Made by a program: the position numbers and the translations under genes
IMG/VR virus record: IMGVR_UViG_3300031576_000002
Location: 1 to 64,000 of that record
Length of the DNA: 64,000 nucleotides
Direction: 5' to 3' (one strand)
The notes under the pieces: model-generated
The model's input: the letters and a program-made list of their open reading frames with translations, nothing else
The model's database searches: none
What the model was told of the DNA's origin: nothing
Shown here: piece after piece, positions 39,128-61,662 of the stretch
Position numbering within the stretch: position 1 is the first letter of the stretch
Layout: the number at the start of each line of letters is the position of its first letter

Positions 39128-39137
39128 AACAGCAAAA

Positions 39138-44174: not shown

Positions 44175-44410
44175 CAGCCTGCACGCGCAGCAGCCTTACT
44201 CCACAGAACGCGAATCGCTGCCAAAGTAGATCCGCCTTGTCCGATCACACGGCCGTAGTCCTTTTGATCCACCATGATCTCCAGGACCAGCGTGTGACCG
44301 CCTGCAATCTTGACCACGCTCACTTTTTCTGGAGCCTCGACAATGAGGCGAATACACGCCTCCAAGGTGAGGCGTAGCGATTCAGCAGGGTCGAAAGTAA
44401 CGGAATCCAT
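44114..44410 (-). CDS. khpA: KH-domain RNA-binding protein (KhpA-like)
   Basis: LIVEAPEKVSV...LEIMVDQKDYGRVIGQGG.TL.AIR. Confidence 0.8.
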   Translation of the reverse strand: MDSVTFDPAESLRLTLEACIRLIVEAPEKVSVVKIAGGHTLVLEIMVDQKDYGRVIGQGGSTLAAIRVLWSKAAARAGCWTRFFIDLPGAPVEPGFSR

Positions 44411-46700: not shown

Positions 46701-46990
46701 GGATTCATCACCGCCCGCAAAAGCCCTTCACTCTTCATCATTTCCAAAAGCGGCAAGGCTCTACATGAATCCGCGCCGTGAATGGCTCCACTAAATGGAT
46801 TTTTTCCCCGGCAGTCCCGGCATACCACCCAGCAGGCATCTTCCAGCGCCACCTGTCGCGCAGCTCCCGACTCCGCGTACCGGGCGTCGATGCTACTAGG
46901 CTTGAGCGCTTCTGCCCGCCAACACGGCTCGATTGTGTTCGAGTGGGTGTCCCTGCAAATCGGACACTCGTCATACTCAGAAAGGCTCAT
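46691..46990 (-). CDS. Small Cys-rich protein
   Basis: CPIC, CRDC. Confidence 0.5.
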   Translation of the reverse strand: MSLSEYDECPICRDTHSNTIEPCWRAEALKPSSIDARYAESGAARQVALEDACWVVCRDCRGKNPFSGAIHGADSCRALPLLEMMKSEGLLRAVMNPWL

Positions 46991-48093
46991 ATTGCCCTAG
47001 CTGTCTCTCGTATCAGCGCCAAACACTGCTCCTTCAAGTCGTCCACCGGCACCGACCAATCCTTGCGCGAGGCGAGAAACGCGATCAACTCTTCTTCCGG
47101 AGACTTGCCTAGCTGCGACAGCACCGCCCCTTGGATCTCTACTTTGCCAGGCTGTGAGCTTTCTACGAATCGCTTCTCAACCAGCAGCGTAACTTCCCGC
47201 TTGGCCGCGCTGGCCCGCAAGGCAGGAATATCCAGAGCCCGCAGTTCCGCCGGAGTGTCGCTGACCGTCAGCTTGAGGATAGTTCGCGGTACACAAGTTT
47301 GTACCGCACCCTTGACTTCGTCCGCTTGAACCGTCGCCGCCGCAAGACGGTACGGCTTCTCCAACAAGATCGGCCTTGTCTTCACGCCTTGCGACATGAT
47401 CGTAACTAAGATCCCGCCGCTATCCTCGTAGGCTTCCCCAAAGTCCTTCTGCACGAGACTGCCGGAGTAGTAAGCAGGAGTCTCGCACTTGATCCGCTGG
47501 CGCTTGTGAATGTCACCGGCCGCGACATAGTCCACGTCCAGCTTGTCGAGAATCCTTGGATCGAGTCCTTTGTCTGCGGGCATGCCTCTGTACGCAGCAC
47601 CTTGGAAGGTCTCGTGCAGCATGAGAATGATGGGCTTCTCGATCTTCTCCGGGTGAAAACCTGGCCAGTTTCGCGGCTGAAATCGCTCAGGTCCACCGTA
47701 GGGCGGGATCACAACCAGAACGAACGTCTCGAACTCCTCGACCGCTAGCGTATCGAAGACACGAAGGTGGTGGAACCTGCCCTCTACAATCTGGAGCGTC
47801 TTGAGGGTGTGGTAGCCATTCAGCTCCCGGTTCAGGTAGTCGTGGTTCCCCGGCATGACAAGCACTGGAATTTCCAACTTGTCTACTCGATCGAACCAGG
47901 CAAGCAGCGCGTCCTTCTCCTGCTGGTGCGGATGAGGGTGCTCGAAGATGTCGCCCGCTAGCAGGATCGCCTCGACGGTTTCCCGTCTCGCAACCTCGAC
48001 GATCTCATCGAGCGCGAGCATCTGCCGTTCGAGGCTTCCTGGCAGCTTGCGCTGCGCCCCGATCTGCAAATCAGCAATATGCACAAACCTCAT
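46987..48093 (-). CDS. sbcD: SbcD/Mre11/gp47-like metallophosphoesterase nuclease
   Basis: HIADLQ, AGDIF, PGNHD, AGDIH, YSGS..Q.DFGE. Confidence 0.92.
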   Translation of the reverse strand: MRFVHIADLQIGAQRKLPGSLERQMLALDEIVEVARRETVEAILLAGDIFEHPHPHQQEKDALLAWFDRVDKLEIPVLVMPGNHDYLNRELNGYHTLKTLQIVEGRFHHLRVFDTLAVEEFETFVLVVIPPYGGPERFQPRNWPGFHPEKIEKPIILMLHETFQGAAYRGMPADKGLDPRILDKLDVDYVAAGDIHKRQRIKCETPAYYSGSLVQKDFGEAYEDSGGILVTIMSQGVKTRPILLEKPYRLAAATVQADEVKGAVQTCVPRTILKLTVSDTPAELRALDIPALRASAAKREVTLLVEKRFVESSQPGKVEIQGAVLSQLGKSPEEELIAFLASRKDWSVPVDDLKEQCLALIRETARAI

Positions 48094-49666: not shown

Positions 49667-49854
49667 GGATCTCGCTTCCCAGACGCACGTATGTCTTCGT
49701 CGATCAGATTTTCGATCTGCCTGTGCAGGTCCGCGCTGACTTGTTCAAGGTCTTCACCATCAGCGACAGTCGTTGTGATACTGGTGGAGAATTCGACGGA
49801 CTGGTAGTCAGCCGACACTCTCTTGACTACGCCCTTGCTCAGCTTCAACGGCAT
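49618..49854 (-). CDS. Small hypothetical protein
   Basis: 'SADYQSVEFSTSIT' pattern; ORF track. Confidence 0.5.
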   Translation of the reverse strand: MPLKLSKGVVKRVSADYQSVEFSTSITTTVADGEDLEQVSADLHRQIENLIDEDIRASGKRDPWIQRIVTKAFQVKSA

Positions 49855-51688
49855 GGGGTTTCTCGCGCAGGGCTCGCCGGACCTCTTTCAAAAACTCGGG
49901 ATCTTCGCTGAGCGCCTGCTTTAGCTTTTCGCGACCGATGTAGCTTCTCCCCAGCAGCGTGAGTTTTCTACGGTCGCCTTCTACTATACCGCGTGAGATT
50001 GCGGCGCGAAGAACGCCGGAAACCACGTCGATTCCAGTTTTGTAATTGAGGATGACCTCGGCCTCTCCGCCTGGAGGGGCAAACTTGTTTTTCACTACTT
50101 TGATCTTGACCGTGTGCGCGTCTGGAATTTTATCTCCGCCGGCACGACTTACCCGCACGCTGAGCGCCTTCCAGTGTTTCAGCGCTCTCCCGCCGGGCTG
50201 ATCTTCGGGACTGCCCCACATGACATTCACTTTGCTACGGAGCTGGTTGATGAATACCAACACGGTACTCGTCTTGTTAAGACGGGGAGCGATCTTCGCA
50301 AGTCCGTGCTGGACAAGGCGTGCTTGCAGGCCGGGAATCTCTTTGTCCTCGACATCTCCCGCAACGACCCGGGCAGGCGTCACGACTGCGATCGAGTCCA
50401 CCACGATCACGGCGTAGCGATCCTGGTCGATCAGCGCGTAGAGCAGATCGAAGAAGCGTTCGCCACTGGGAACGCCGTCTGAATTCTCGGGAAGGCCCTT
50501 GACCCGCACCAACCGCTTGCGCTGAATTCCAAGCGTCCGCATCCAAGTAGGAGGAGTTGCCTGCTCCAGATCGCAGTAGACACACGGTTTCTTCAAGTCC
50601 TTTTGAATAGAGCCAATCATGTGAAGCATGAGCGCCGACTTCCCTGAATTGTGAACAACGAAACCATTTGCTACATAATTGTTGAACGGGCTTGCCACCC
50701 TCAAGTCGTATGTTCGGCATTTGCCCGCTTTACGAATGACAGAAATGTGATCCTCTACTGCCACAAAACGTAGATTGTTGTGCCGTTCAAGTGCATGCTC
50801 CCTTCCATGCGCGCTGGGCGACATTACAACAAGATTTTCTAATGCGTCATTTTTACAGTCTTCGTCTAGGTGGTGTACGTGCTCTGCTTGAGATAAGAAC
50901 TTTAACCCTTCAAGCCGCCCGTCGTTAAGAAGCCGAACATACTCCTTAAACGATAGTCCGTTCAAAGCAGCTTCCACGACAGCCCTGGAACGCCTTAGCC
51001 TGCGGTAGGTGTAGCATTTGCCCGCTGTGCCAGGCACTCTCTTAGTAGGGGCGTTGGGATGGAACTTCACAAAAATGTCAATTCGACTAATAGCTGGAGT
51101 ACGCTCGCGCACACGGTACGGAGTACGATTGTGGATATAAACTGAGTCACCTACTACCAAATCGGCCAAAGCTGTATAGCACTCACCTGTCCAGAATTTG
51201 TGCTCAGGTGTAGCTTTTAGACGGTACCCCTTAAACGTCTCAACTTCTAGGCATTGCCGCACACCCGTCGAGATTACATCCACAACTCTATTTTGAAAAA
51301 TACGCCCCTCTTCGTTCACGCAAGAAGTAAAAAAGTATGAATCGACTATAGCAGAGCGCTTATACATCCCTAGTCCTGACATCGGAATCCCGTGAAAACG
51401 GTTGTACAGCCGCTCAACCGTCCCCCCTTTGCAGCTTTGACGCCGCCCTTCTGGGGTTCGCGTGCCATAGCGTATAAAAGTGCTAGCCTCCACGCAGGAT
51501 TCCGGACCCCAGGCTTCCACAATCTTGCCTTGGGGAAGGCCCCCAATTCCAGTAGCTACATCAAAATCCTCGATGCCAGTCGAGTAGACGCGGGTGTACT
51601 GATCGTCTGCCTCAAATCCTCGTCCGATGCAGGGACCGAATTTGGCCACCAGTCCGTCTAACTCGTTCTTTTTCTTTTCTTCTTTCAT
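49808..51688 (-). CDS. recA: RecA-like recombinase with an intein in the P-loop
   Basis: GIGGLPQGKIVE.WGPES/SGKS, VVDS, QARL, FINQLR, PGGRALK, KNKFAPP. Confidence 0.95.
   Translation of the reverse strand: MKEEKKKNELDGLVAKFGPCIGRGFEADDQYTRVYSTGIEDFDVATGIGGLPQGKIVEAWGPESCVEASTFIRYGTRTPEGRRQSCKGGTVERLYNRFHGIPMSGLGMYKRSAIVDSYFFTSCVNEEGRIFQNRVVDVISTGVRQCLEVETFKGYRLKATPEHKFWTGECYTALADLVVGDSVYIHNRTPYRVRERTPAISRIDIFVKFHPNAPTKRVPGTAGKCYTYRRLRRSRAVVEAALNGLSFKEYVRLLNDGRLEGLKFLSQAEHVHHLDEDCKNDALENLVVMSPSAHGREHALERHNNLRFVAVEDHISVIRKAGKCRTYDLRVASPFNNYVANGFVVHNSGKSALMLHMIGSIQKDLKKPCVYCDLEQATPPTWMRTLGIQRKRLVRVKGLPENSDGVPSGERFFDLLYALIDQDRYAVIVVDSIAVVTPARVVAGDVEDKEIPGLQARLVQHGLAKIAPRLNKTSTVLVFINQLRSKVNVMWGSPEDQPGGRALKHWKALSVRVSRAGGDKIPDAHTVKIKVVKNKFAPPGGEAEVILNYKTGIDVVSGVLRAAISRGIVEGDRRKLTLLGRSYIGREKLKQALSEDPEFLKEVRRALREKPHAVEAEQGRSQESVG
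50648..51496 (-). mobile_element. Intein with HNH endonuclease (283 aa)
   Basis: Starts CVEASTFI, ends TYDL.V...NNYVANGFVVHN/S; internal HVHHLDEDCKNDALENL. Confidence 0.92.
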
Positions 51689-54450
51689 GCAGCCTCCACA
51701 AGCTTAGGAAATAGATCGGCGTGAGCTTCGAAAAACTTCTCCGGCTTCATCATCTCGCTCAGGCTGAACCCTACTTCCATCTCAACCGGCATGGAAATAT
51801 CGAACGTCGGGTGCAGCATTCCGCGTACCTTGCTGCAAACCTTCATCGCTTTCGGTAGATCCTGGACTGCGACTTCGGAGAGGATCGCGTCGTGAATGTG
51901 CAGGCAGATCCTCGCATCAAGTTTCGTCTTTTTGTATGCCCTGAGCAGGTTCACCGCACGAGTTGTGTTCTCATCGTGACAGGCACCCTGAATGGGGGAG
52001 TTGGAGGCTTCTCGATCTTGCTTCGTCACCCAGTCTACTTTCCGGCCTCGAATGCCCCGAATGACGCGGATACGTCCGTGAAGGGAGCGAACGAACCCGG
52101 TCGTCCTCGCAAAAGCACGGACGTTCGCTACGAACTGGTGCGCCTGCCGGTAACGACCCCAGAAGGCTTCCTGGATCTTCTTCGCCACTTCCAGTGGGAT
52201 CCCTACCTGCATGGCTAGAGTTTCTGGCCCCCCGCCATAGATCGTCTCGAACACGCCGGTCTTGGCTTTCTCCCGTAGATCGCCGCCTGTCTCTTTGTCT
52301 TTCTGGATTTCCTCTTCTGTCTTCTCAAATGCAACCGAGGCAACGTAGCGGTGAACATCGAACCCGGTGCGAATGTCTTCCTTCATTATCTCGTCATTGG
52401 CGTAGATTGCCAGCAGCCGAAACTCGGCTTGCGCGTAGTCCTCTTTGATGAAGGCATAGCCCGGCCTAGCCCTGAATATCGATTTGATCTCTTTGGCCCT
52501 TGGGCCACGATTGGGAATGTTCTGGAGATTGATGGGACGCTTCGAGGACCATCTTCCCGTCTCCGTGCCGATGACGAAGTATTCGGCGCGTAGCATTCCA
52601 TCCTTGCCGATATTTTTGAGAACGCTATTTTTGAGATACGAGATGTAAGAGAGGAGCTGGCGAGTACGCGACAGCTCGTTCACAACGGGATGATCGTATT
52701 TTTCCAAGACCTTCTTGCCGGTCGCTCGCGACCCTTTCTTCGTCATGTGTAGAACAGGAAGCTCCAGAATATCGAACAGCAGCGTGTGCATGTGCTTGGT
52801 GGAGCGGCAGTTGAACGTGACAGGCCGCAGCGGCTTTCGTGGCTGAAAGGGTTTCTTTCCCTGCGCCTCGCGCTGAGCCTCGGTCTTCGCGTCGCGCCTT
52901 TCCGTCTCGATCGTGCCAACTCTGCGAATTTCTTCTAGCTCGAAGAGCTTCGAATTTACCTGCGTGACTTCTTTCTGGTACTGGTCGATCAGATCGAGAA
53001 CTCGGTCTTTGTCGATGTAGACCCCGCCCTCCATCATGTGATCGGCGAGTTGAAGGACGGGCGCCATGATCTGAAAATAGAACTCTTCCAGGCCGAGACC
53101 TACGGGGCTGGGAACTCTGATGTCAAAGTTGCGGATCCGTCCGAGCAGGCTATCGACGACTCGCCACTCCGCGTCCGCATCGGCTGCGGCGTAGCGGTAC
53201 AGGGTTTCTTCGGGCAGCAGCGCATAGCTACTTCCTCGGATCAGCTTGGACTTTGCGCGATCGAGCGGCTCTTCGTAGTTTCCAAGCTCGGTCCAGTGGA
53301 AGCTGAGTTCCTTGAGGCCGTGCCCTCCCTCTTGGTCGATCAAGTGAGAGAGAACCATGCCGTCGATATGAAAGCCCTTGACTCTGATGCCGAGGTCGTG
53401 GCGAAGGATGCGGCAATCGAACAGGCGGGCATTGTGCCCGATCTTCTTGATCGTGGGGTCTTCCAGGAGTCTCTTGAGGGTGCCGTGCAAAACTGCTTCT
53501 TGCGCAGGAGTCCAAAACGGCTGCAAGGCTTGCCCAGGAGTCGCAACCTGGTGCCGCCAGGGAATCGTCGCGGCTTTGCCTTTGGCCCAGCAAAAGCTGA
53601 TGCAGAGAATCTTATCTTCGCGTGCAACGGGATAGCCACGCCGCAAGGCCGTATCTGGCGGCGAGGTTTCCAAGTCGAACGAGATCGTGTCGCAGCCTTC
53701 CAGGAGTTCGAGGAGATTCTTTGCGGCTTTGAATGTGTCCGCGATGCGATAGTCCGGTAGAGCACTGGGGACTTCGATGCCGGCGTAGCTTGCCATCATC
53801 CGAATCGCGTTCGTAAAGCTGATGGGATCCAGCCATTCCAGCGGATCCTGCTTCTCTCGCCTCAGGTAGGCAGCGGGGTGATATGCCGGAATCAGGTAGG
53901 GGCCTCCTCCCTGCCATTGGCGTTTTCGATCGGAAAGGAACACGTCTCCGACTACGTCCTGCATCACGACCTGCTTTTTGAATCCGAACATCCGCAGCAC
54001 TTCACGAGTTGCAGTTCCGCCGAGAAGGCCAATCACACGAGGACGGTAGCGAGCAATATCTTTCCAGAGGTAGTCGAGGCAGGGCTCGTAGATTGCTCGG
54101 TTAGGTACACGGTTGAGGGGAAGCTTGCAGCGAATCGTGTTGGCAACCCAGACCTGCTTGGCTAGACCGAGCTGGTCGAGGTGCTGATTCAGGAACTGTC
54201 CGGCTGGACCTACGAACGGGGTATCGAGCGCTACTTCGTAGTCGCCGGGAGCTTCTCCCACGAGCATGATGGGGTTGCGAGGATCGCCACGGTTTCCCAC
54301 GAGAGTACGGCGGACGACTTTTGGCTCTCCTCCATCCTCGGCACACTTTACGAGCGAGGTCTCCCACAGGGAGCACTTCGTACAGCGGACCTTCTCACCC
54401 GGCACAGCTTGAGCGAGAAGATCTTCGAGAAAGCCAACTTGGTCGTTCAC
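51685..54450 (-). CDS. polA: Family A DNA polymerase with N-terminal family-4 uracil-DNA glycosylase domain and 3'-5' exonuclease
   Basis: CTKC...GEAPG..E...PFVG.AG...RC...HP; FDLET, GHN..FD, YAAADA; QNIP, DYAQAEFR, KT..F..IYG, IHD. Confidence 0.95.
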   Translation of the reverse strand: MNDQVGFLEDLLAQAVPGEKVRCTKCSLWETSLVKCAEDGGEPKVVRRTLVGNRGDPRNPIMLVGEAPGDYEVALDTPFVGPAGQFLNQHLDQLGLAKQVWVANTIRCKLPLNRVPNRAIYEPCLDYLWKDIARYRPRVIGLLGGTATREVLRMFGFKKQVVMQDVVGDVFLSDRKRQWQGGGPYLIPAYHPAAYLRREKQDPLEWLDPISFTNAIRMMASYAGIEVPSALPDYRIADTFKAAKNLLELLEGCDTISFDLETSPPDTALRRGYPVAREDKILCISFCWAKGKAATIPWRHQVATPGQALQPFWTPAQEAVLHGTLKRLLEDPTIKKIGHNARLFDCRILRHDLGIRVKGFHIDGMVLSHLIDQEGGHGLKELSFHWTELGNYEEPLDRAKSKLIRGSSYALLPEETLYRYAAADADAEWRVVDSLLGRIRNFDIRVPSPVGLGLEEFYFQIMAPVLQLADHMMEGGVYIDKDRVLDLIDQYQKEVTQVNSKLFELEEIRRVGTIETERRDAKTEAQREAQGKKPFQPRKPLRPVTFNCRSTKHMHTLLFDILELPVLHMTKKGSRATGKKVLEKYDHPVVNELSRTRQLLSYISYLKNSVLKNIGKDGMLRAEYFVIGTETGRWSSKRPINLQNIPNRGPRAKEIKSIFRARPGYAFIKEDYAQAEFRLLAIYANDEIMKEDIRTGFDVHRYVASVAFEKTEEEIQKDKETGGDLREKAKTGVFETIYGGGPETLAMQVGIPLEVAKKIQEAFWGRYRQAHQFVANVRAFARTTGFVRSLHGRIRVIRGIRGRKVDWVTKQDREASNSPIQGACHDENTTRAVNLLRAYKKTKLDARICLHIHDAILSEVAVQDLPKAMKVCSKVRGMLHPTFDISMPVEMEVGFSLSEMMKPEKFFEAHADLFPKLVEAA

Positions 54451-54953
54451 GAGTCTTGATCGTCGCTTTTTTCGGCAGGAGCTACATGGAACATGTCGCC
54501 CTTCTCTACAATACCCCGAGTCCGGACGAGGTGTGAGAGAGCCAGCTTGAGACGGACATTCAGGATCTTGTGAGCAGACTCAGGAAGCTTCGCTCCAAAG
54601 ACTCCGAACAGGTCGGAGAAGCTCCGCGGCTTGCTTGAGATGGATTCGAGCACTGAAGTGCGGAACACCTCTGGATCTGAAAGATCATCTTTTGCGACTA
54701 CCGGCCTATCAACCTTTTCCGAAGGAGTCGAAACGACCTTGGACGTCTTGACTGGCTTAGGTAGTGAAGCCGCAGTCTCGTCCTTGATGAGAGGAATCAG
54801 AGGGTAGGTACCTGGCACGAGAACTTCGTTCTCCGTGTGTAGATTCAAGACGGCTGTCTTAGAACCTTCCTGTCGAAGCACCTTCAACTCTTTCCCATAC
54901 TTTGAGAGGTAGTAGCTACCTACCTGAGCATTTTTTGCAAGCACCTCCGCCAT
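54447..54953 (-). CDS. Hypothetical protein with C-terminal winged-helix-like region
   Basis: SD GGAGG before ATG 54953. Confidence 0.55.
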   Translation of the reverse strand: MAEVLAKNAQVGSYYLSKYGKELKVLRQEGSKTAVLNLHTENEVLVPGTYPLIPLIKDETAASLPKPVKTSKVVSTPSEKVDRPVVAKDDLSDPEVFRTSVLESISSKPRSFSDLFGVFGAKLPESAHKILNVRLKLALSHLVRTRGIVEKGDMFHVAPAEKSDDQDS

Positions 54954-54986
54954 GTCCGATCCTCCAATAGCCAGGGTTATCTGACC

Positions 54987-55028
54987 TAGTTGTGGTACCA
55001 CAACTAGCTAGCATTATACTACCTATCT
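54987..55028 (-). promoter_or_regulatory. 42-bp promoter+palindrome element, copy 1
   Basis: Minus strand AGATAGGTAGTATAAT then palindrome; 36/42 identical to 61621-61662. Confidence 0.8.
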
Positions 55029-55045
55029 AACGGTTTTCTCATTGC

Positions 55046-55059
55046 AGTCTTATAAGACT
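55046..55059. promoter_or_regulatory. AGTCT-TATA-AGACT operator-like palindrome
   Basis: Perfect match to the motif at 9999, 56324 and 56383. Confidence 0.6.
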
Positions 55060-55400
55060 TCCGATATTTTCTTTGTACCTACCACTTTTCTTACACATCT
55101 CTGTAAGATCAAAAGCATTTAAGCTTATGGACACTGGTCAAGTGTCCCTCTTGGAGATCCTATTACGTGCCGTACAAGAAGGCAAGAGTAAGGCGGACTC
55201 GAAAAGAAGCTCGCAAAAAGAATCACCATCAACCAGGTCGAGTAAAGGGGGATCATTAAAGGGCCGAGCATATCTTAGCTCTAGCCGGAGATACTATGAC
55301 CTACTTGTTACGTAGTGGCGCGACGTTTAGATGGACGACTTTACGTGCCCCACTTGTTGACTCGACTTTTATTGTACCACGGAAGATCGACCACACACTT

Positions 55401-55562
55401 AAAGCTGCGTTGAAAAAAGGGCCAGAATCGGCAAGTTTTTGCATTAACAGACGTTTTTCAACTTAAACTCCCGTTGGAAAAACAGCCTGTTTCTGCGTAG
55501 GTCCACGTAAAACTGCCGTTGGATTCGTGAACTGTCGTTGCAGATTTGATAAACTGGCGTTG
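55401..55562. repeat. Iteron-like 12-bp direct repeats (plus strand, consensus near AAACTGnCGTTG)
   Basis: 55401 AAAGCTGCGTTG, 55465 AAACTCCCGTTG, 55510 AAACTGCCGTTG, 55529 GAACTGTCGTTG, 55551 AAACTGGCGTTG. Confidence 0.55.
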
Positions 55563-55620
55563 GAATTCTATCAAGCCTTGTTGGACGAGCAAGCGCTCGC
55601 AAAGGCTCGACGAGATGCCC

Positions 55621-55654
55621 AAAAAAGAAGGGAGCCGCCTTTCAGTGGCTCCCT
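55621..55654 (-). terminator. Rho-independent terminator after the sigma factor gene
   Basis: Minus strand GGGAGCC-actgaaaggc-GGCTCCC followed by TTCTTTTTT. Confidence 0.8.
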
Positions 55655-55678
55655 AAAACTACTAATACAGATTGATAT

Positions 55679-56290
55679 TTACTGGCTGACCGAAGCGCGC
55701 ATCTTTGCGAATACCCGCTCCTCGAACCTCTGGCACGTCTCACTGTGGATTCCCAGGCGGCGGGCGATACGAAGGGTCGTACCATCCTCCTCGACCCACG
55801 CCTCCACAAAACTACGCTCGGTCGGTGTGAGCACTGCCAGCGCGTGCTGGACAAGCTCCCGCCGTTCTGCGCCTGCGAAGGCGGTAGCGGGCGTGCTCAG
55901 GTGCAGCGAGTGATGCTCGGGAGCAGGTCCAAAGTCGTGCGGGATTTCCCGCCCTGCGCCCCTTTTGAAAGACTTGTACCGGTTGCTCAGAATGTTCTTG
56001 GTCTTGAGCTTGAGCGCGGTGGCAGGCTCGAAGCCGTACGGTTGCGCGCCCTTCTTCTGGAACATCGCCCAGAGGCCCAGCAGGCACTCCTGGGAGAGAT
56101 CCTCCCAGTCTTCAGGACGACCGCTGCCGTGAGAGGACTTCCACGAAGCGGTCTTGGTGTACTTCTCGAAGCTCTTGAAGAGAGCTTCTGCCGCTACCTT
56201 CTTGACTCGTATACGACCCTTCTTCTTGATCGACGGAACGAACGCCTGCGCTGCGAGTGCCGAGATCCTCTCGGCGTGAGCTGCTGCCAT
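55679..56290 (-). CDS. RNA polymerase sigma factor (sigma70/ECF-like)
   Basis: Region 2 'WEDLSQECLLGLW'; region 4 'LTPTER...LRIARRLGIHSETC'. Confidence 0.8.
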   Translation of the reverse strand: MAAAHAERISALAAQAFVPSIKKKGRIRVKKVAAEALFKSFEKYTKTASWKSSHGSGRPEDWEDLSQECLLGLWAMFQKKGAQPYGFEPATALKLKTKNILSNRYKSFKRGAGREIPHDFGPAPEHHSLHLSTPATAFAGAERRELVQHALAVLTPTERSFVEAWVEEDGTTLRIARRLGIHSETCQRFEERVFAKMRASVSQ

Positions 56291-56318
56291 GCGATTCCCC
56301 TTTCAGCGGAAGGCCCGC

Positions 56319-56411
56319 ATAGTAGTCTTATCAGACTTGCTTGTCAAGCCCCTGGCTCGACGAGCTGTTCGCCTTGGGGTACAGTCTAATGAGACTGTAG
56401 TAGTCTGTCAA
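56319..56411 (-). promoter_or_regulatory. Tandem sigma70 promoters, each with an AGTCT-N4-AGACT palindrome
   Basis: TTGACA-17-TACTAT (56319-56347, palindrome 56324-56337) and TTGACA-17-TAGACT (56383-56411, palindrome 56383-56396). Confidence 0.8.
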
Positions 56412-56427
56412 GTACTGAGCGCTGCGC

Positions 56428-56895
56428 CTACAGCCGCTCCAGCTCGCGCAGAAGCGCCTTCCGCCCCTGCTCCAGCAGCGCTACCGTCCGGTACGACGGA
56501 GCTGGAAGGCTAAGCCAGCGCTGGTCTAGACGGTCCCAGAGACGGTCTCTTTCCTGCACGGATAACGTCGATTTCCCGACCAGGAGGCTCAGGCGCTTCC
56601 AGAGGGCATCACAGTCCTTCCGGAGCGCCTGAGCCCGTAAGTAGGCCGCAGAACGCTCTATATCGAGGTCGGATACGGTATCCTCACCACCTTCAAGAAT
56701 GTCGATCAGGCGGGCTCTAGGACCGCCCCGCTGGCAGGAGAAGCAGTGCCACAGGCCCTCATCAGGCCGGAAGCTGAAGCTGGGATGCTCGTCCTTGTGG
56801 AAGGGGCAGCGGCCAAGCAGGTGGCCGTCCGACAGGTGGGAGACAACCTCGATCCCCAGCCGGGCCAGGAAGGCTTCTGCGCGCTCAGGATCCAT
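56428..56895 (-). CDS. Stand-alone CHC2 primase zinc-binding domain protein
   Basis: CPFHKDEHPSF...WHCFSC..GG; no TOPRIM domain. Confidence 0.85.
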   Translation of the reverse strand: MDPERAEAFLARLGIEVVSHLSDGHLLGRCPFHKDEHPSFSFRPDEGLWHCFSCQRGGPRARLIDILEGGEDTVSDLDIERSAAYLRAQALRKDCDALWKRLSLLVGKSTLSVQERDRLWDRLDQRWLSLPAPSYRTVALLEQGRKALLRELERL

Positions 56896-58267
56896 GCTGC
56901 GACTTCTTCCCCTTCATTTTTATCTTCCAGTCGCCGACGTAGCTCCAAGCTGGAGCAAAGCAGACGTAGCTGAACACGAACCTGCGACCGAAGCGATCCT
57001 TCTCGATAATCATTTTGAGCTTGCTATGCAGCGCGTCTTCCTTGGACTGGCGAAGGTGGACGATGGTCTCGCAGTGGGGGGCGATGTAATGGCTGAGCCC
57101 GATCGAGTCTACGGTCTCGGCCGTATCCCCCTTCTTCTTATTTGCCTCTCTTGATTCCTGGACAGCGGTAATGGCAGGGATAGCGGTTCGTCGCGTGAAG
57201 TTGTGAAGCTCCTGAAAGAGTAGATCGTACTTCTCACTGCGGCCGTCCCTGAACTTTCGCACCGGCATCATGATCCCGGCGTAGTCGATCACGACCACGT
57301 CTGGAAACGCCCCCGTTCTCGTGCGGAAGATTTCGACTTCGCGGTAGAGGTCGGTTACCGTCGCCTGATCTGGTAGATCGACCATGTAGAAGGGCGGCTT
57401 GATCTTCTTCTGAGCTTTGAGTAACGCCTTGTACTTGTCCCTTTCCGCGTCGGAGAGCTTTGCATTCCGAATCAGGGCGGAATCGAGCATGCCTGCGCGG
57501 GCATCGTAGCAGTGCTTGAGTTCCGTGTGCGACATCTCCAGGCTCAGGTAGAGGACGGACTTGCCTTGCTGCGCGACATTGTACGCAATCGAGATCATCG
57601 TCCGGCTCTTTCCACCGGACGTACCTGAGTAGAGGCAGGTGAGGGATCCCGGAGCGATCCCGCCCGTGGACTGATCGAGAAACTCGATCCCGAACGGGAT
57701 GGCCCGAACTACGGCCTCGCCACGTGCTTTGGCGTTGTACTCGCGCCAGCGTTCGGACACATCGTCAGAGACAAACCCACGCCACTGAACATTGTCCTGC
57801 GCGCCACCTTCTTGCAGGAGGCGGGCTAGGATGTCGGAACGGAGCTTCTTGTAGTCTCTTCCGCTGCCAAGACCTTCCTGGATGGAGCGCCCAACGGTAA
57901 GAAGCTGCCGTCCTTCCCAGAGATCCGCCAAGCGATTGCGGTAGAAGTCGATATTGGCGGTGTCATGTTCGACTTTGGAGATCCGGCTATAGGCTGTGAG
58001 GAGCTTCGCTTTCTTATCCGCGTCGCGGGCGTGCTGATCGAGAAAGGTGTAGAATACTTCGGGCGCGGGATAGCCTTGATGCGCTTTCCGAAAAGCTCGA
58101 AAAGCTGCCAGCAAATCTTTGTGGCTAGTCCTTGTGAAAAGCTCGGGAGGTATGGATTCTACTTGCGGACCAGTCTCACGACTTATCAGGCAGGCAAGGA
58201 GGGCCGCTTCGGCCTCGACGTCGGCCAGGATGAGGAGAGGCTCCTCTTTTTTGACCTTCAGCGCCAT
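56885..58267 (-). CDS. dnaB: DnaB-like replicative helicase
   Basis: SGTSGGKS, YLSLEM, VVIDY, TAVQ, SIGLSH, KDRFG. Confidence 0.9.
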   Translation of the reverse strand: MALKVKKEEPLLILADVEAEAALLACLISRETGPQVESIPPELFTRTSHKDLLAAFRAFRKAHQGYPAPEVFYTFLDQHARDADKKAKLLTAYSRISKVEHDTANIDFYRNRLADLWEGRQLLTVGRSIQEGLGSGRDYKKLRSDILARLLQEGGAQDNVQWRGFVSDDVSERWREYNAKARGEAVVRAIPFGIEFLDQSTGGIAPGSLTCLYSGTSGGKSRTMISIAYNVAQQGKSVLYLSLEMSHTELKHCYDARAGMLDSALIRNAKLSDAERDKYKALLKAQKKIKPPFYMVDLPDQATVTDLYREVEIFRTRTGAFPDVVVIDYAGIMMPVRKFRDGRSEKYDLLFQELHNFTRRTAIPAITAVQESREANKKKGDTAETVDSIGLSHYIAPHCETIVHLRQSKEDALHSKLKMIIEKDRFGRRFVFSYVCFAPAWSYVGDWKIKMKGKKSQHGS

Positions 58268-59007
58268 CGCTCGTGCTCGCGGAAACTCTCGCCTTCCAAG
58301 GTGACGGGTACGAGGCTCCGGAGCCGATCGACGATATGGTCAGGGAATAGATCGCTGAGTGTCTGCACTCCTCTCGACTTTTCAGCGGGGGGGACTTCAA
58401 TGGGGCAGTTCGCGGTCGCGATCAAGGCACAGTCGTTGTCGTAGACCTCAGACATCAACTCCTGAATCGCCTCGTTCCGCATCTTGCCGGGAACGCTCTC
58501 GTCCATGAGCACCGCAACCTTGTCGATCTCTTCCAGAGCTAGCAGCCGGGAGCGCAGGATCCGCTCAACCCGATTGCGCTTCGCCATGTCGCGGAGCGAT
58601 TCGATCCGCAGGTTCACTAGGGCGGAGAGACGGATCACGTAGGCGCTGTAGTTCCGCTCGCAGGCTTCTCGAATCAGGAGCGCCGTGATGGCACTTTTGG
58701 CGACTCCTGGAGGCCCTTGGATGTAGAGGCCGCCTCCGGTGCGGATTCTCTGATCGAGCGTATCAACGAAGTCCTCGACCTTTGCAAGCTGCTTCTGATT
58801 GACGGCGCGGAACTCCCCGTGGAGGCTCTTCCAACCAAAGCCGCGGTAGCGCCGTTTGACATTGGCGCGGTCTAGTCGGTACTCCAGCACCGCCTTGGCC
58901 GCGCAGCTACACGACCTGAACTCTCCCGACTCTGGATCCAGAGTCACACCCATGCCGGAGCAGACCCGGCAGGGAATAGGAGATCTAGCGGGCTTACCCG
59001 TTTGCAC
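58258..59007 (-). CDS. DnaC/IstB-like AAA+ helicase loader
   Basis: CRVC...CSC Zn site, GPPGVAKS, LALEEID, ATAN, DRL. Confidence 0.85.
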   Translation of the reverse strand: MQTGKPARSPIPCRVCSGMGVTLDPESGEFRSCSCAAKAVLEYRLDRANVKRRYRGFGWKSLHGEFRAVNQKQLAKVEDFVDTLDQRIRTGGGLYIQGPPGVAKSAITALLIREACERNYSAYVIRLSALVNLRIESLRDMAKRNRVERILRSRLLALEEIDKVAVLMDESVPGKMRNEAIQELMSEVYDNDCALIATANCPIEVPPAEKSRGVQTLSDLFPDHIVDRLRSLVPVTLEGESFREHERWR

Positions 59008-59030
59008 TGCGACTCTCGACTAGGGCGCGC

Positions 59031-59597
59031 TTAGTGGATCGGATGCGCAGCTTCATCCCTACGACGTACAATACCCCAGTCGATCGCAGCTTTTCGGGTG
59101 GGCGCCATCGACTTCGAGGGCATCCGGGTCGTGAGCTGGAACATCTTCTCACTTGTGATGTGCCCAAGCATGGGAACGAATCGAGCGCTGTAAAAACGCT
59201 CGAAGCAGGCGTCCACGAACTCCTTGTACTCAATGGGAGACCAGCGGTGCTGGTCTTGAAAGCATGCGATCCGCGCCGTAAGCGCCGGAACCTCTCGCCT
59301 GGAGACGGAAAGTGGACGGTTGTAGCAGCGGTAATACCGTTGGGTGAAATAGTGTAAAATGTCTTTCGACGTCCAAGCTGCGTATTCCTTTTCCGTCAGT
59401 TTTTTCGGTTCTTTCGCGCTCTTGAGGTTTTGGTTCTCTTCGAGTGCGGCTGCGTACCTATCCCGCAGGATTTGCAGTTTCTTGCACAGCTTTGCGTTCT
59501 TCCGCTGTAGCTCCCGGTAGGACTGTAAGACGTCGAGTTCGACGGGATCTCTTCGTGGGTCTGAGACGTTCTGCCGGCCCGATTTGCCCGCTGCCAT
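59031..59597 (-). CDS. Hypothetical protein, possible replication initiator/loader partner
   Basis: Immediately upstream of the DnaC-like gene; overlaps the SF2 helicase end. Confidence 0.4.
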   Translation of the reverse strand: MAAGKSGRQNVSDPRRDPVELDVLQSYRELQRKNAKLCKKLQILRDRYAAALEENQNLKSAKEPKKLTEKEYAAWTSKDILHYFTQRYYRCYNRPLSVSRREVPALTARIACFQDQHRWSPIEYKEFVDACFERFYSARFVPMLGHITSEKMFQLTTRMPSKSMAPTRKAAIDWGIVRRRDEAAHPIH

Positions 59598-61029
59598 AGA
59601 TCCTCCGACGGAATACGCGGAACGGAGGTTGCTCGCTGCGTAAAAACTTGACCGTCCGTTCTGCGTGATTTTTTAGGTGGACTACATCTGGCTGAAAAAA
59701 GACGGCGGTTGCCCGCTTCTTTCCCTCCGACACGGTCATCGACCGCAAACGCTGGAAGGCTTTGATCGCGGACTTCTTGACATCTGCTACGACAATCGCG
59801 TCGAGGGTGGGGAGATCCACGGCTTCGTCGATCAGCGTGGAGATGAGACAGACCCCGTCTTGCTCTTCGATGTGCCGCAAGCCGGCACGACGTTCGCCTG
59901 GAGAACTCTTGCCCGACACGAATAGGCTGCGCGGGATGGCGCGTTCGAGCTGCTGACCGTGTGGAACGTGTCCGACGATAACAGCGACTGTCTTCCCGCG
60001 GCGGCGTAGGTATTCTACGATGTGTGCAACAGTTCTGTGGTAGCGGTCGTTGTCCACCAGCGCGGTCTTGTAGACCTGCTGGTAGCCGCCCCGAGTATCA
60101 AGGTCTTCGGCAGGAAGCTGGAACACGGTCACGTCCAGAGGGAGTATGATACCCCGCTCGACCGCCTCCTCGTAGCTCATGTGGTAGAGGATCGGCCCCG
60201 TGACTGCTTCAATGCCGATGTCGGAAGCGTCTTCTCTCCACGGCGTTGCCGTGAGTCCGACCACATAAGCAGCTTTGTGGAACTCCTGCGCAAGTAGCTG
60301 AGCAATGTCGCTGCTGGTATGGTGCGCTTCGTCCCAAACTACAACTTTGGAGTCCCGGCAGATTCTTTGTACGGGCGCGTGCCTTAGAAGGGGCAGAATT
60401 CTTTCCTTCTTCATTCCTTTGGGGCAGTCCTTCCTCTTGACCTTCAGCCCGAATGCGGAGGCAAGAGACTGGAATGTAACAACTAGAATATCACCATCTA
60501 GGTCTGCCTTGCCGTCCGCGATGACGCCTACCTTGGCCCCTGGCAGCAATTTTCGGAATTTATTCGCAGCTTGGTGTGCAACCTCCGCCTGCCAGACAAT
60601 GTATAGAAATGGGCTCAGCGAAGTTCTACGAAACAGCTCTACTGCGAGAATAGTTTTTCCGCTCCTTGGAGGAGCCGATACAATTCCTCGCCGGTATCGC
60701 TGAACCTGCTCCAGAACATCGGGCTGAAAAGAGCGCAGGGGAAAGGCAGGACAGAACTCTTCTTCGGGGTACTCCGGCCGCAGGTCTTCGACGATCCGGT
60801 AGGGCTCCTCGATAGAGTCGAGGTACTGACATGCGCGCGGCAAGAGCCCGGTAAGGAACCTACCACCTTTGTGCAAAAAGCTCTTTCTGCCGTCCCATCC
60901 GTGGGCGTAGGCCCTCGTAAAAACGTAGCCCGGAATGGAGTAGCTCAGCGCGAACCGAAGCTCTTCGGTGAGCTTTTCACTGAGCCCGGCGACACGGGTA
61001 GTAGCGGAATCAACGTAGATCTGAAGCAT
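59458..61029 (-). CDS. SF2 helicase (UvsW/XPB/Res-like)
   Basis: PPRSGKT, DEAHH, GLTATP.R.D, DEAVDLP, FQRLR. Confidence 0.9.
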   Translation of the reverse strand: MLQIYVDSATTRVAGLSEKLTEELRFALSYSIPGYVFTRAYAHGWDGRKSFLHKGGRFLTGLLPRACQYLDSIEEPYRIVEDLRPEYPEEEFCPAFPLRSFQPDVLEQVQRYRRGIVSAPPRSGKTILAVELFRRTSLSPFLYIVWQAEVAHQAANKFRKLLPGAKVGVIADGKADLDGDILVVTFQSLASAFGLKVKRKDCPKGMKKERILPLLRHAPVQRICRDSKVVVWDEAHHTSSDIAQLLAQEFHKAAYVVGLTATPWREDASDIGIEAVTGPILYHMSYEEAVERGIILPLDVTVFQLPAEDLDTRGGYQQVYKTALVDNDRYHRTVAHIVEYLRRRGKTVAVIVGHVPHGQQLERAIPRSLFVSGKSSPGERRAGLRHIEEQDGVCLISTLIDEAVDLPTLDAIVVADVKKSAIKAFQRLRSMTVSEGKKRATAVFFQPDVVHLKNHAERTVKFLRSEQPPFRVFRRRIYGSGQIGPAERLRPTKRSRRTRRLTVLPGATAEERKAVQETANPAG

Positions 61030-61034
61030 GGGGG

Positions 61035-61535
61035 CTAGCCAGCAAAATTCAGGCGTATCTGTTCGGGCTTGACAGCGGCTAGAAAATCATCTAGCCGCAC
61101 AACTGCGACACGGGGCTTGCGGAGAATGAGGGTTGTTCCGCTGCGTCCTGATTTCCAGCCCAGAAGAATAAGATCGCTACGGCGCAGCATGACGAAGCTA
61201 CAGGTGAAGTTTCCCTTGAAGATGAGGAGCCCCAGAGAAGCCGGCGTCTTCTCCCGCTGCAACTGCTCCCAGAAGCGGAACAGCTTCGGCCCTCGGGTAT
61301 CGGATTCCAGAAGCAGCTTCCACGACCACGCCTTCGTGTTCTTACATTCCACGGTGATTGGGAAGGGGGCCGCTTCCGGTTTCACAACTCCTATGTCGCC
61401 GTGGCCGGTGTTGGAGAAGCGGGCGTGGCTGCCAGAGCCGCTAGTACGCCAGAGCGCATGGCGGTCTCCACACCACCATCCGCCTAGAAGGCGTGCGATT
61501 TCGCGCTCATACTGAGAGCCCTTGGCACTCGACAT
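61035..61535 (-). CDS. Holliday junction resolvase (Hjc-like PD-(D/E)xK)
   Basis: KGSQYEREIA...RTSGSG...GDI...VECKN. Confidence 0.85.
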   Translation of the reverse strand: MSSAKGSQYEREIARLLGGWWCGDRHALWRTSGSGSHARFSNTGHGDIGVVKPEAAPFPITVECKNTKAWSWKLLLESDTRGPKLFRFWEQLQREKTPASLGLLIFKGNFTCSFVMLRRSDLILLGWKSGRSGTTLILRKPRVAVVRLDDFLAAVKPEQIRLNFAG

Positions 61536-61536
61536 G

Positions 61537-61578
61537 ACTGGCTTTGCCTCAGAGAGTCTCGAATTTTGAGGCAAGCCC
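61537..61578 (-). mobile_element. 42-bp hairpin mini-element made of the two ends of the second tnpB element
   Basis: 61537-61554 identical to 37891-37908; 61558-61578 20/21 identical to 39094-39114. Confidence 0.65.
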
Positions 61579-61620
61579 GACTATACGATACCGCTTGAGA
61601 TTAGGTAAGCTCAGCCTACC

Positions 61621-61662
61621 GAGTTGTGGCAGAACAACTAGGTAGGATTATACTACCTATCT
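61621..61662 (-). promoter_or_regulatory. 42-bp promoter+palindrome element, copy 2
   Basis: 36/42 identical to 54987-55028. Confidence 0.8.

What the first reader, a model, noticed from the sequence alone, without database searches (positions are those of the whole stretch)
54987..61662. A 42-bp promoter-plus-palindrome element heads both replication operons
54987-55028 and 61621-61662 are 36/42 identical with no gaps: minus-strand AGATAGGTAGTATAAT (-10 like, no consensus -35) followed by AGTTGT-N6-ACAACT. Copy 1 is a perfect 22-bp palindrome. One copy precedes the polymerase/RecA/SbcCD operon, the other the resolvase/SF2/DnaC/DnaB operon. Inference: a middle promoter for the phage sigma factor or an activator, with an operator or 5' RNA hairpin co-regulating DNA metabolism.
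Basis: partly seen in the sequence, partly recalled or inferred. Interest (0 to 1): 0.65.

Follow-up and report, generated by a model that had tools for sequence, protein, structure and literature searches.

The report
Five-copy palindromic element at replication promoters
The two 42-bp repeats are real, but they are parts of a 62-bp triple-palindrome element found five times in this uncultured 205-kb phage; in the two window copies it wraps around a promoter -10 box at the head of each DNA-replication operon, most likely as a binding site for a regulator.

Summary
In detail: 55028-54987 and 61662-61621 (minus strand) are 36/42 identical, and copy 1 holds a perfect 22-bp palindrome.

The window is the first 64 kb of a 205,227-bp phage contig from a cave metagenome. 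The core AGTTGT-N6-ACAACT occurs five times in that contig, against 0 in 40 composition-matched simulations. Each core sits in a ~62-bp two-fold-symmetric element whose arms are themselves small palindromes.

Only the two window copies carry GTATAAT in the upstream arm; the other arms read GGTTAC-like there. Leaderless genes elsewhere in the genome imply that transcription starts 7 nt after the -10. That puts the start on the first base of the core in both window copies.

Two distant syntenic relatives keep a TATAAT at the same two operon heads but lack the palindrome. So the promoter is conserved and the palindrome is specific to this lineage.

Three of the five copies head DNA-metabolism operons, including both halves of a split primase.

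Best reading (about 0.4): the element is an operator cluster for a sequence-specific dimeric regulator that overlaps a promoter lacking a -35. Rivals are an RNA hairpin, a selfish or recombinational repeat, and a sigma-specific promoter. There are no RNA data, so no transcription start has been shown.

The parts
54966..55027 (-). Element copy 1, full 62-bp two-fold-symmetric unit (upstream arm, core, downstream arm)
   Evidence: Half-site matrix scores of 40.7 and 38.6 bits for the two arms; arm-by-arm alignment
55013..55019 (-). GTATAAT -10 box, lying in the centre of the upstream arm's own small palindrome
   Evidence: A weak -35-like ATGAGA lies 18 nt upstream. Match to the phage -35 block is 4.4 bits, background probability about 0.02
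54986..55007 (.). Core palindrome, perfect over 22 bp. The predicted transcription start at 55006 is its first T
   Evidence: Start inferred from GTATAGT-N6-ATG leaderless genes
61600..61661 (-). Element copy 2, full 62-bp unit. The TAG stop of the upstream glycosyltransferase gene lies in its outer GATAGG block
61647..61653 (-). GTATAAT -10 box of copy 2, with no -35 of either kind
61621..61640 (.). Core of copy 2 (AGTTGT-N6-ACAACT at 61622-61639); predicted transcription start at 61640
61580..61586 (-). Second -10-like box (GTATAGT), 13 nt downstream of the end of element copy 2 (61600), followed by a hairpin-forming leader that recurs at 39090-39128
54447..54953 (-). First gene after copy 1: 168-aa protein of unknown function, possible winged-helix C-terminus. 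PolA (51685-54450), RecA with intein (49808-51688) and SbcD/SbcC-like genes (46987-48093, 44410-46473) follow
56428..61535 (-). Operon after copy 2: PDDEXK/RusA-like nuclease, SF2 helicase, DnaC-like ATPase, DnaB-like helicase, primase zinc-ribbon protein
55679..56290 (-). Divergent ECF-type sigma-like gene between the two operons. Two TTGACA-N17 host-type promoters precede it (56383-56411, 56319-56347) and an intrinsic terminator follows it (55621-55654)

Best explanation
The repeat is the upstream two-thirds of a 62-bp cis-element made of three adjacent palindromes. The invariant central one reads TAGTTGTG-N4-CACAACTA. It is flanked on each side by an arm of the form TAGGyAGG-N5-CCTrCCTA, with GATAGG and CCTATC at the outer edges.

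I take the element to act on double-stranded DNA as an operator cluster for a sequence-specific dimeric regulator. Candidates encoded by the phage are an 80-aa Cro/CI-type HTH protein, a MarR-like winged-helix protein next to it, and the 168-aa first product of the polymerase operon. A host protein is also possible.

In the two window copies a -10 box with no -35 (GTATAAT) sits in the centre of the upstream arm. The core then covers about +1 to +20. A bound protein would therefore cover the -10 box, the start site and the early transcribed region. That would switch both replication operons together.

In the three copies without a -10, the same complex would gate read-through from the upstream genes. 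One of these copies heads the operon with the other half of the split primase.

Shown: the anatomy, the copy number, the positions relative to genes, and conservation of the -10 in relatives. Inferred: the start site, protein binding, the direction of regulation, and which RNA polymerase holoenzyme uses the promoter.
For: - Five exact cores in 205 kb, against 0 in 40 composition-matched simulations, and no further copies at one mismatch.
- AGTTGT is identical in all 10 half-sites and the spacing is fixed, while the central 4-6 nt vary. This is the pattern of a dimer site on DNA. Protein-bound RNA hairpins usually conserve the loop instead.
- The two arms of one copy are no more alike (13.6/22) than arms of different copies (13.7/22). 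The long hairpin shows no covariation (115 to 371 of 500 shuffles reach the observed values). So each arm keeps to a consensus rather than to its partner.
- No half-element stands alone anywhere in the genome.
- Three genes have GTATAGT-N6-ATG, which sets the start 7 nt after the -10. That is the first base of the core in both window copies.
- A TATAAT is kept at both orthologous operon heads in relatives L006 and L035.
- The copies head the PolA/RecA/SbcCD operon, the helicase and primase-zinc-ribbon operon, and the kinase and primase-Toprim operon. The flanking genes are not paralogous, so this is not a segmental duplication.
- DNA-binding candidates exist in the genome.
- Precedent: SPBRE repeats in phage SPbeta were predicted in silico and later shown to be the sites of the MrpR repressor (PMC10516654).
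Against: - No binding protein is identified and no RNA or binding data exist. Only DNA runs from a cave metagenome hold the sequence.
- The two relatives keep the -10 but not the palindrome, so the element is not needed for the promoter as such.
- Three copies have no recognisable promoter, so a roadblock role has to be assumed for them.
- The triple-palindrome layout is not explained by a single dimer. Centre-to-centre distance is about 18.5 bp, and arm and core half-sites differ.
- All copies lie on the sense strand of transcribed gaps. The three-hairpin fold pairs 84.5% of cells, with 3 pairs changed on both sides and slightly more G-U pairs on the sense strand. An RNA role therefore remains open.
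Confidence: 0.4

Rival explanations
1. The element works at the RNA level. Transcripts started at the internal -10 begin exactly with the core hairpin, a 5'-terminal stem-loop that would protect the replication mRNAs from 5'-end-dependent decay. Read-through transcripts from upstream genes carry both arms. They could fold into a hairpin of up to 29 bp that host RNase III cuts, or that binds a phage RNA-binding factor.
For: - The predicted start coincides with the first base of the core in both window copies.
- All five copies lie in sense-strand gaps between co-directional genes. In three of them the upstream stop codon sits in the outer block.
- Copies 3 and 5 fold far better than shuffled sequence: -34.8 and -45.8 kcal/mol, z -5.1 and -7.1.
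- The three-hairpin fold pairs 84.5% of cells, with 3 pairs changed on both sides.
- G-U pairs number 7 on the sense strand against 3 on the antisense strand.
Against: - Stem sequence is invariant while loops vary, the reverse of most protein-bound RNA hairpins.
- Copies 1 and 4 do not fold better than shuffles over their full length (z -1.1 and +0.4).
- The long hairpin shows no covariation.
- No U-tract follows, so it is not an intrinsic terminator.
- No Rfam family matches and the phage encodes no RNase III.
- Relatives show no significant structure at the same place.
Confidence: 0.25
2. The element is a selfish or recombinational repeat: a small palindromic interspersed element comparable to REP or MITE elements, or to the PeSL cassettes of T4-type phages. 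It has spread to gene junctions. Its association with promoters is secondary, and it may mediate module shuffling.
For: - It is lineage-specific: absent from the two syntenic relatives and from IMG/VR, GTDB genomes and JGI metagenomes apart from its own contig.
- Five dispersed copies sit tightly in gaps, with terminal inverted blocks GATAGG and CCTATC.
- Copies 1 and 2 bracket a 6.6-kb module and have the most similar upstream arms, 20/22, as gene conversion would give.
- PeSLs show that promoter-plus-stem-loop cassettes can drive recombination in large phages (PMC2839356, PMC4122927).
Against: - No target-site duplication is visible at any copy.
- No Y1/RAYT transposase or integrase was found in the 85%-complete genome.
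- The core is perfectly conserved while the arms drift, which points to selection on the core.
- Three of the five copies sit before DNA-metabolism operons, including both halves of a split primase. This is unlike PeSLs, which flank orphan genes.
Confidence: 0.15
3. The conserved 16-mer plus the palindrome is itself a middle promoter read by the phage sigma-like protein or an activator, and the palindrome is only an accessory.
For: - -10 boxes with no -35 are conserved at both operon heads in three related phages, each of which has the sigma-like gene next to or between these operons.
- The sigma-like gene has host-type promoters and its own terminator, as an early gene would.
- phiEco32 gp36 is a precedent for a phage sigma that reads a single -10-region motif (PMC12276001).
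Against: - The blocks upstream of the -10 (GATAGG) recur in copies that have no -10. They lie at about -21 to -16, which is not an activator or -35 position.
- The other, more numerous class (GTGyGkAAww-N14-GTATAGT, 11 fixed-spacing copies plus one offset by 1-2 nt) is at least as good a candidate for the sigma-dependent set. Copy 2 does not match its -35 block.
- The sigma assignment is itself weak: all hits are below curated cut-offs and the AlphaFold model has pLDDT 51.
Confidence: 0.1
4. The element is a replication-related DNA structure. It would extrude as a cruciform or three hairpins and serve as a priming or helicase-loading signal next to the replication genes.
For: - The sequence can form one long hairpin or three short ones.
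- Copy 1 lies beside a 650-nt non-coding gap with four iteron-like repeats.
- Three copies sit next to replication genes.
Against: - Five dispersed copies, two of them before unrelated small genes or a methyltransferase.
- GC skew shows no switch at any copy.
- Nothing ties the sequence to a known priming signal.
Confidence: 0.05

Closest known systems
SPBRE repeats of Bacillus phage SPbeta, bound by the master repressor MrpR (PMC10516654)
   Same: A short conserved element repeated in intergenic promoter regions across a large phage genome. It was first seen only in silico and later shown to be the recognition site of one phage regulator that controls many operons.
   Different: SPBRE is a 15-bp motif in a temperate phage. 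Here the unit is a 62-bp triple palindrome with only five copies, no integrase or lysogeny genes were found, and binding is not shown.
PeSL (promoter-early stem-loop) cassettes of T4-type phages (PMC2839356, PMC4122927)
   Same: Composite promoter-plus-stem-loop motifs repeated at gene junctions of large phage genomes.
   Different: PeSLs have a full sigma-70 consensus promoter with an AT-rich upstream region and a G/C-rich terminator stem-loop. They flank orphan genes in hyperplastic regions. Here the -10 lies inside the palindromic element, the core follows the -10, there is no U-tract, three copies lack a promoter, and the genes served are core replication genes.
lac-type operator overlapping the start site, and the dispersed C1 operators of phage P1 (from my own knowledge, not checked here)
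   Same: A dyad operator covering about +1 to +21 of a promoter. In P1, many scattered operators place replication functions under one repressor.
   Different: P1 operators are asymmetric 17-mers. The present site has three adjoining dyads, and its protein is unknown.
T4 middle promoters (MotA box plus sigma-70 -10) and phiEco32 gp36 promoters (PMC12276001)
   Same: Phage promoters that keep a -10-region motif, lack a host -35, and serve replication or middle genes.
   Different: There the specificity element lies at -30 or at the -10 itself. Here the conserved blocks flank and follow the -10 and are palindromic.
T7 RNase III processing sites and 5'-terminal stabiliser hairpins (from my own knowledge, not checked here)
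   Same: Related hairpins between genes of long phage transcripts; a hairpin at the very 5' end of the message.
   Different: Those are defined by structure, not by invariant stem sequence. Two of the five copies here fold no better than shuffled sequence.

Membership tests
Sigma-70-type promoter | -10 hexamer close to TATAAT | tested here: met
   Perfect TATAAT at 55013-55018 and 61647-61652. The other three copies have GTTAT, CTAAG or ATTAC at this position.
Sigma-70-type promoter | -35 hexamer close to TTGACA, 16-18 nt upstream | tested here: not met
   Copy 1 has ATGAGA (4/6) at 18 nt; copy 2 has nothing. True TTGACA-N17 promoters exist elsewhere in the genome.
Sigma-70-type promoter | Mapped transcription start | not testable with these tools
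   No RNA run holds the sequence. The start is inferred from leaderless genes.
This genome's GTGyGkAAww-N14-GTATAGT promoter class | GTATArT -10 box | tested here: met
   Both copies read GTATAAT.
This genome's GTGyGkAAww-N14-GTATAGT promoter class | Upstream block at fixed spacing | tested here: inconclusive
   Copy 1 scores 4.4 bits with a 1-nt shift (background probability about 0.02). Copy 2 scores -7 or below. The 11 training members score 1.5 to 13.3 bits.
Dyad operator of a dimeric DNA-binding regulator | Inverted half-sites with conserved sequence and fixed spacing, variable centre | tested here: met
   AGTTGT in 10 of 10 half-sites, always N6 apart, centres differ.
Dyad operator of a dimeric DNA-binding regulator | Overlap with promoter or start site | tested here: inconclusive
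   True for 2 of 5 copies, and only on an inferred start.
Dyad operator of a dimeric DNA-binding regulator | Cognate binding protein | not testable with these tools
   Only candidates are available: HTH_3 protein, MarR-like protein, 168-aa protein.
PeSL cassette | Consensus sigma-70 promoter with AT-rich upstream region beside a G/C-rich terminator stem-loop | tested here: not met
   No -35. The palindrome follows the -10, is not G/C-rich and has no U-tract.
PeSL cassette | Flanks orphan genes in variable regions | tested here: not met
   It heads conserved replication genes, which are syntenic in relatives.
Intrinsic terminator | G/C-rich stem followed by a U-tract | tested here: not met
   No T-run follows any copy. 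A real terminator lies at 55621-55654.
RNase III substrate | About 20 bp or more of near-continuous double-stranded RNA | tested here: inconclusive
   Pairs out of 29 in the long fold: 26 (copy 5), 25 (copy 3), 22 (copy 2), 21 (copy 1), 18 (copy 4). Cleavage cannot be tested here.
Lambda nut/boxB-type antitermination site | Conserved loop, plus a boxA-like single-stranded motif | tested here: not met
   The loops differ between the copies, except that copies 1 and 3 share the same centre (GGTACC), and no shared flanking motif lies outside the element.
REP or MITE-like mobile palindrome | Terminal inverted repeats | tested here: met
   GATAGG and CCTATC outer blocks.
REP or MITE-like mobile palindrome | Target-site duplication and a cognate transposase | tested here: not met
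   No flanking duplication. No Y1_Tnp or integrase match in the 85%-complete genome.

The most novel reading that the evidence does not exclude
The triple palindrome is a conformational sensor of where a transcript began. RNA that reads through from the upstream genes contains both arms. It folds into one long hairpin that is cut or blocks progress. RNA started at the -10 hidden in the upstream arm begins exactly at the core. It can form only short hairpins, which give it a protected 5' end. One 62-bp unit would then act as insulator, promoter and mRNA stabiliser for the replication operons.
Probability: 0.1. Interest if true: 0.75.

Novelty: new variant of a known kind. Interest (0 to 1): 0.5.

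Why it matters
Regulatory circuits of uncultured jumbo phages are almost unknown. Here sequence alone yields three things that can be tested:
- a small regulon of five sites that ties together the polymerase, helicase and split-primase operons;
- a precise predicted transcription start;
- a short list of candidate regulators.

If binding is shown, this would be a second case, after SPBRE and MrpR, of a dispersed phage operator recognised first in silico. It would also be the first with a triple-dyad layout that wraps the -10 box. It further shows that a repeat judged from one window can be the visible part of a larger, genome-wide family.

Tried and rejected
**Searches for the element elsewhere**
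- The core with its CC/GG flanks was searched in IMG/VR, GTDB genomes and JGI metagenomes. Only the phage's own contig and chance hairpins without the arms were found.

**Searches for relatives**
- No nucleotide match among cultured phages. The best PolA match there is 27% identical.
- IMG/VR scans with PolA and with an SF2 helicase profile gave nothing closer than 29%.
- Word searches found only L006 (PolA 41%) and L035/L036 (SF2 47-48%). The sigma-like protein has no relatives at all by that search.

**Ideas tested and dropped**
- Segmental duplication of the glycosyltransferase-to-replication junction: the two glycosyltransferases are unrelated.
- An ECF-type promoter reading GATAGG-N16-AGTTGT: dropped because no half-element occurs alone.
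- A T7-like promoter in the outer arm: the resemblance falls in variable positions. The single-subunit RNA polymerase search found nothing, but its controls were silent too, so it is uninformative.
- ParB centromere, integrase site, RAYT target, phage RNase III: none of these proteins was found.
- Origin of replication from GC skew: no clear switch.
- CTAG avoidance: only mild, 0.78 of expectation.

**Steps that gave nothing usable**
- Rfam: no family in the window.
- AlphaFold model of the sigma-like protein: pLDDT 51, too poor for a fold search, which was therefore not run.
- Read laying was not run. The only runs are DNA runs kept as contigs, which cannot show RNA ends, and the 6,000-letter limit cannot span both copies to look for a joined form.
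- The large representative-protein search and complex prediction were not used. Neither could show DNA binding.

Full report

Yes. On the minus strand, 55028-54987 and 61662-61621 are 36/42 identical without gaps. Both begin with the same 16 nt, ending in TATAAT, and continue into AGTTGT-N6-ACAACT. Copy 1 has a perfect 22-bp palindrome at 54986-55007. The 16-mer occurs nowhere else in the window with up to 3 mismatches (0.09 expected). It also occurs nowhere else in the whole contig.

- After copy 1: a 168-aa unknown protein, family-A DNA polymerase with an N-terminal UDG-like domain, RecA interrupted by an intein, then Mre11/SbcD-like and Rad50/SbcC-like genes.
- After copy 2: a PDDEXK/RusA-like nuclease, an SF2 helicase, a DnaC/IstB-like ATPase, a DnaB-like helicase and a primase zinc-ribbon protein.

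**2.

The window is the first 64 kb of a 205,227-bp virus contig, 85% complete by CheckV. It comes from a cave metagenome.

The core AGTTGT-N6-ACAACT occurs five times in that contig: at 54988, 61622, 126308, 156857 and 201308. Forty composition-matched simulations gave none, and allowing one mismatch adds no further copy.

Around every core the sequence stays two-fold symmetric for about 62 bp. From the outside inward each half reads GATAGG, a 4-5 nt variable stretch, GTTAy, then sCTACC and TAGTTGTG. A matrix built from the 10 half-elements finds only those 10 in the genome. No half stands alone.

Each arm is also a small palindrome in its own right, TAGGyAGG-N5-CCTrCCTA. The unit is therefore three adjoining dyads. 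It can be drawn as one hairpin of up to 29 pairs or as three short hairpins.

The TATAAT of the two window copies lies in the centre of the upstream arm's dyad. The other eight arms read GGTTAC-like there. One is the element's outer block and arm stem, shared by the family. The other is a -10 box, special to these two copies.

**3. Position relative to genes**

All five copies lie in short gaps between minus-strand genes.
- At copies 2, 3 and 5 the stop codon of the upstream gene lies in or overlaps the outer GATAGG block.
- At copy 4 both arms are largely coding and degenerate, yet the core is intact.

Downstream genes:
- Copy 3: a polynucleotide-kinase-like P-loop protein, followed by the Toprim catalytic half of a DnaG-type primase.
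- Copy 4: small unknown proteins.
- Copy 5: a SAM-dependent methyltransferase.

Three of the five copies therefore head DNA-metabolism operons. The two halves of a split primase (zinc ribbon at 56428-56895, Toprim at 124772-125512) each lie in an operon headed by a copy.

The glycosyltransferases upstream of copies 2 and 3 are unrelated, so the copies are not remnants of a segmental duplication.

**4. Is there a promoter?**

Three lines of evidence bear on this.

*A terminator makes a new promoter necessary.* The sigma-like gene (55679-56290) has two TTGACA-N17 host-type promoters in front of it. A clear intrinsic terminator follows it at 55621-55654. The polymerase operon therefore needs a promoter somewhere in the next 650 nt, and copy 1 is the nearest candidate.

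*The -10 belongs to a wider family.* GTATArT occurs 32 times in the genome, 26 of them on the coding strand and many just before a ribosome-binding site and start codon. Eleven copies carry a shared upstream block at fixed spacing, GTGyGkAAww-N14-GTATAGT, and a twelfth (189719) carries it offset by 1-2 nt. Three genes have GTATAGT-N6-ATG, which implies leaderless messages. One of them is the 80-aa HTH gene. This fixes the start 7 nt after the -10. Applied to copies 1 and 2, the start falls on the first base of the core, at 55006 and 61640. Against the upstream block, copy 1 scores marginally (4.4 bits, background probability about 0.02) and copy 2 does not match. Copy 2 is followed by a second GTATAGT at 61580-61586 with a hairpin-forming leader that recurs at 39090-39128.

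*Relatives keep the -10.* The phage is an orphan, and its best PolA relative is 41% identical. Two syntenic metagenomic contigs were found.
- L006 has the order sigma-like gene, terminator, gap, homologue of the 168-aa protein, PolA, RecA. Its only TATAAT on either strand lies in that gap.
- L035 has the order glycosyltransferase, RusA-like nuclease, SF2, DnaC-like, DnaB, zinc ribbon. One of its two coding-strand TATAATs overlaps the glycosyltransferase stop, 47 nt before the nuclease gene.

Neither relative has the 62-bp palindrome or any significant structure in its place. The -10 at both operon heads is therefore conserved, and the palindrome is specific to this lineage.

**5. DNA site or RNA structure?**

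For a DNA site:
- The half-site AGTTGT is invariant in 10 of 10 cases and the spacing is fixed, while the centre varies.
- The two arms of one copy are no more alike than arms of different copies: 13.6 against 13.7 identities out of 22.
- The long hairpin shows no covariation beyond shuffles.
- Copies 1 and 4 fold no better than shuffled sequence.

For RNA:
- Every copy is on the sense strand of a transcribed gap.
- The predicted start gives a hairpin with no 5' overhang.
- The three-hairpin fold pairs 84.5% of cells, with three pairs changed on both sides (19 to 46 of 500 shuffles reach these values).
- G-U pairs are slightly commoner on the sense strand, 7 against 3.
- Copies 3 and 5 fold very strongly.

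With five sequences neither case is decisive. I weight the invariant stems and variable loops most heavily, and I prefer the DNA operator.

The upstream arms resemble each other more (15.7/22) than the downstream arms do (12.8/22). So the element has a polarity that matches the direction of transcription.

**6. Who might bind?**

The genome encodes these candidates:
- an 80-aa Cro/CI-type protein (HTH_3 at 39 bits, above the cut-off; weak similarity to RstR);
- next to it, a MarR/SarA-like winged-helix protein;
- the 168-aa first product of the polymerase operon, whose Atlas model gives weak winged-helix leads (TM 0.48).

The sigma-like protein matches the sigma70-ECF superfamily model over nearly its whole length (E 2.8e-7). 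It also matches a PHROG sigma family (E 1.8e-5), and weakly matches region 2 and region 4 models. All of these are below curated cut-offs. Its AlphaFold model is poor (pLDDT 51) and its best solved-structure match is ECF SigK at E 0.31. I call it a probable but very divergent sigma.

No integrase, ParB, RAYT transposase or RNase III was found.

**7. Comparison with known systems**

- The nearest functional analogue is the SPBRE repeat of SPbeta. It was predicted in silico in intergenic regions, and ChAP-seq and gel shifts later showed it to be the site of the master repressor MrpR (PMC10516654).
- PeSL cassettes of T4-type phages share the idea of a promoter plus stem-loop repeated at junctions. 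They differ in anatomy and in the genes they serve (PMC2839356, PMC4122927).
- phiEco32 gp36 shows that a phage sigma can read a single motif around -11.5 (PMC12276001).

The present element fails the defining tests for a PeSL, an intrinsic terminator, a nut site and a MITE. It meets the formal tests for a dyad operator, except for the one that matters most: a binding protein.

**8. Verdict**

The 42-bp unit as a sigma-specific promoter does not hold.

Best explanation: an operator cluster that overlaps a conserved promoter lacking a -35. Confidence is about 0.4. The element is a new variant of a known kind, and interest is moderate.

No alternative genetic code was used.

Noticed in passing
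window 55400-55565 (within the non-coding gap 55029-55678): Four iteron-like 16-nt direct repeats (TAAAsTnnCGTTGrAw on the plus strand), spaced 64, 45 and 41 nt apart. They lie in a 650-nt gene-free stretch of lower G+C between the sigma-like gene's terminator and element copy 1. This could be an origin of replication or a regulator array. GC skew gives no clear support.
   Followed up: partly
genome 122427, 145031, 159159, 160004, 162846, 183756, 184566, 187627, 189719, 193780, 196317, 197111 (minus strand, outside the window): A phage promoter class, GTGyGkAAww-N14-GTATAGT, with 11 fixed-spacing copies plus one (189719) offset by 1-2 nt. It is distinct from seven TTGACA-N16/17-TAnnnT host-type promoters (six on the minus strand with N17, one on the plus strand at 139385 with N16). 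Three GTATAGT-N6-ATG cases imply leaderless messages. Which class the sigma-like protein reads is unknown.
   Followed up: partly
window 39090-39128 and 61555-61586, minus strand: A second two-copy repeat: GTATAGT followed within a few nt by GGGCTTGCCTCAAAATTyGAG, which forms a short leader hairpin. One copy lies just downstream of element copy 2.
   Followed up: partly
window 56428-56895 and genome 124772-125512: The DnaG-type primase is split into a zinc-ribbon gene and a Toprim/catalytic gene 68 kb apart. Each lies in an operon headed by a copy of the element.
   Followed up: partly
window 49808-51688 and 51685-54450: RecA is interrupted by an intein with a weak HNH signal. The family-A DNA polymerase carries an N-terminal uracil-DNA-glycosylase-like domain.
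   Followed up: no
window 47714-47794, minus strand: ARAGORN calls a tRNA-Arg(TCG) inside the region that Pfam matches as the metallophosphoesterase domain of the SbcD-like ORF. It is probably a false positive, or else an unusual overlap.
   Followed up: no
window 61626-61654 and 55014-55019, plus strand: Because the upstream arm is nearly palindromic, its mirror image reads TATACT on the plus strand. At copy 2 the scan pairs this with GTGGCA 17 nt upstream. It could be an antisense promoter pointing into the upstream gene.
   Followed up: no
L006 2326-2391: In the distant relative, the conserved TATAAT is bracketed by a perfect 11-nt inverted repeat at about -35 to -25 and +21 to +31. An 11-bp palindrome lies at about +3 to +13. 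The sequence differs, but the theme of dyads around the same promoter is comparable.
   Followed up: partly
genome 120490-121182 (L029 1033-1725), minus strand: Tandem regulator genes: an 80-aa Cro/CI-type HTH protein, apparently leaderless from a GTATAGT box, and a 139-aa MarR/SarA-like winged-helix protein. They lie 5 kb downstream of element copy 3.
   Followed up: partly
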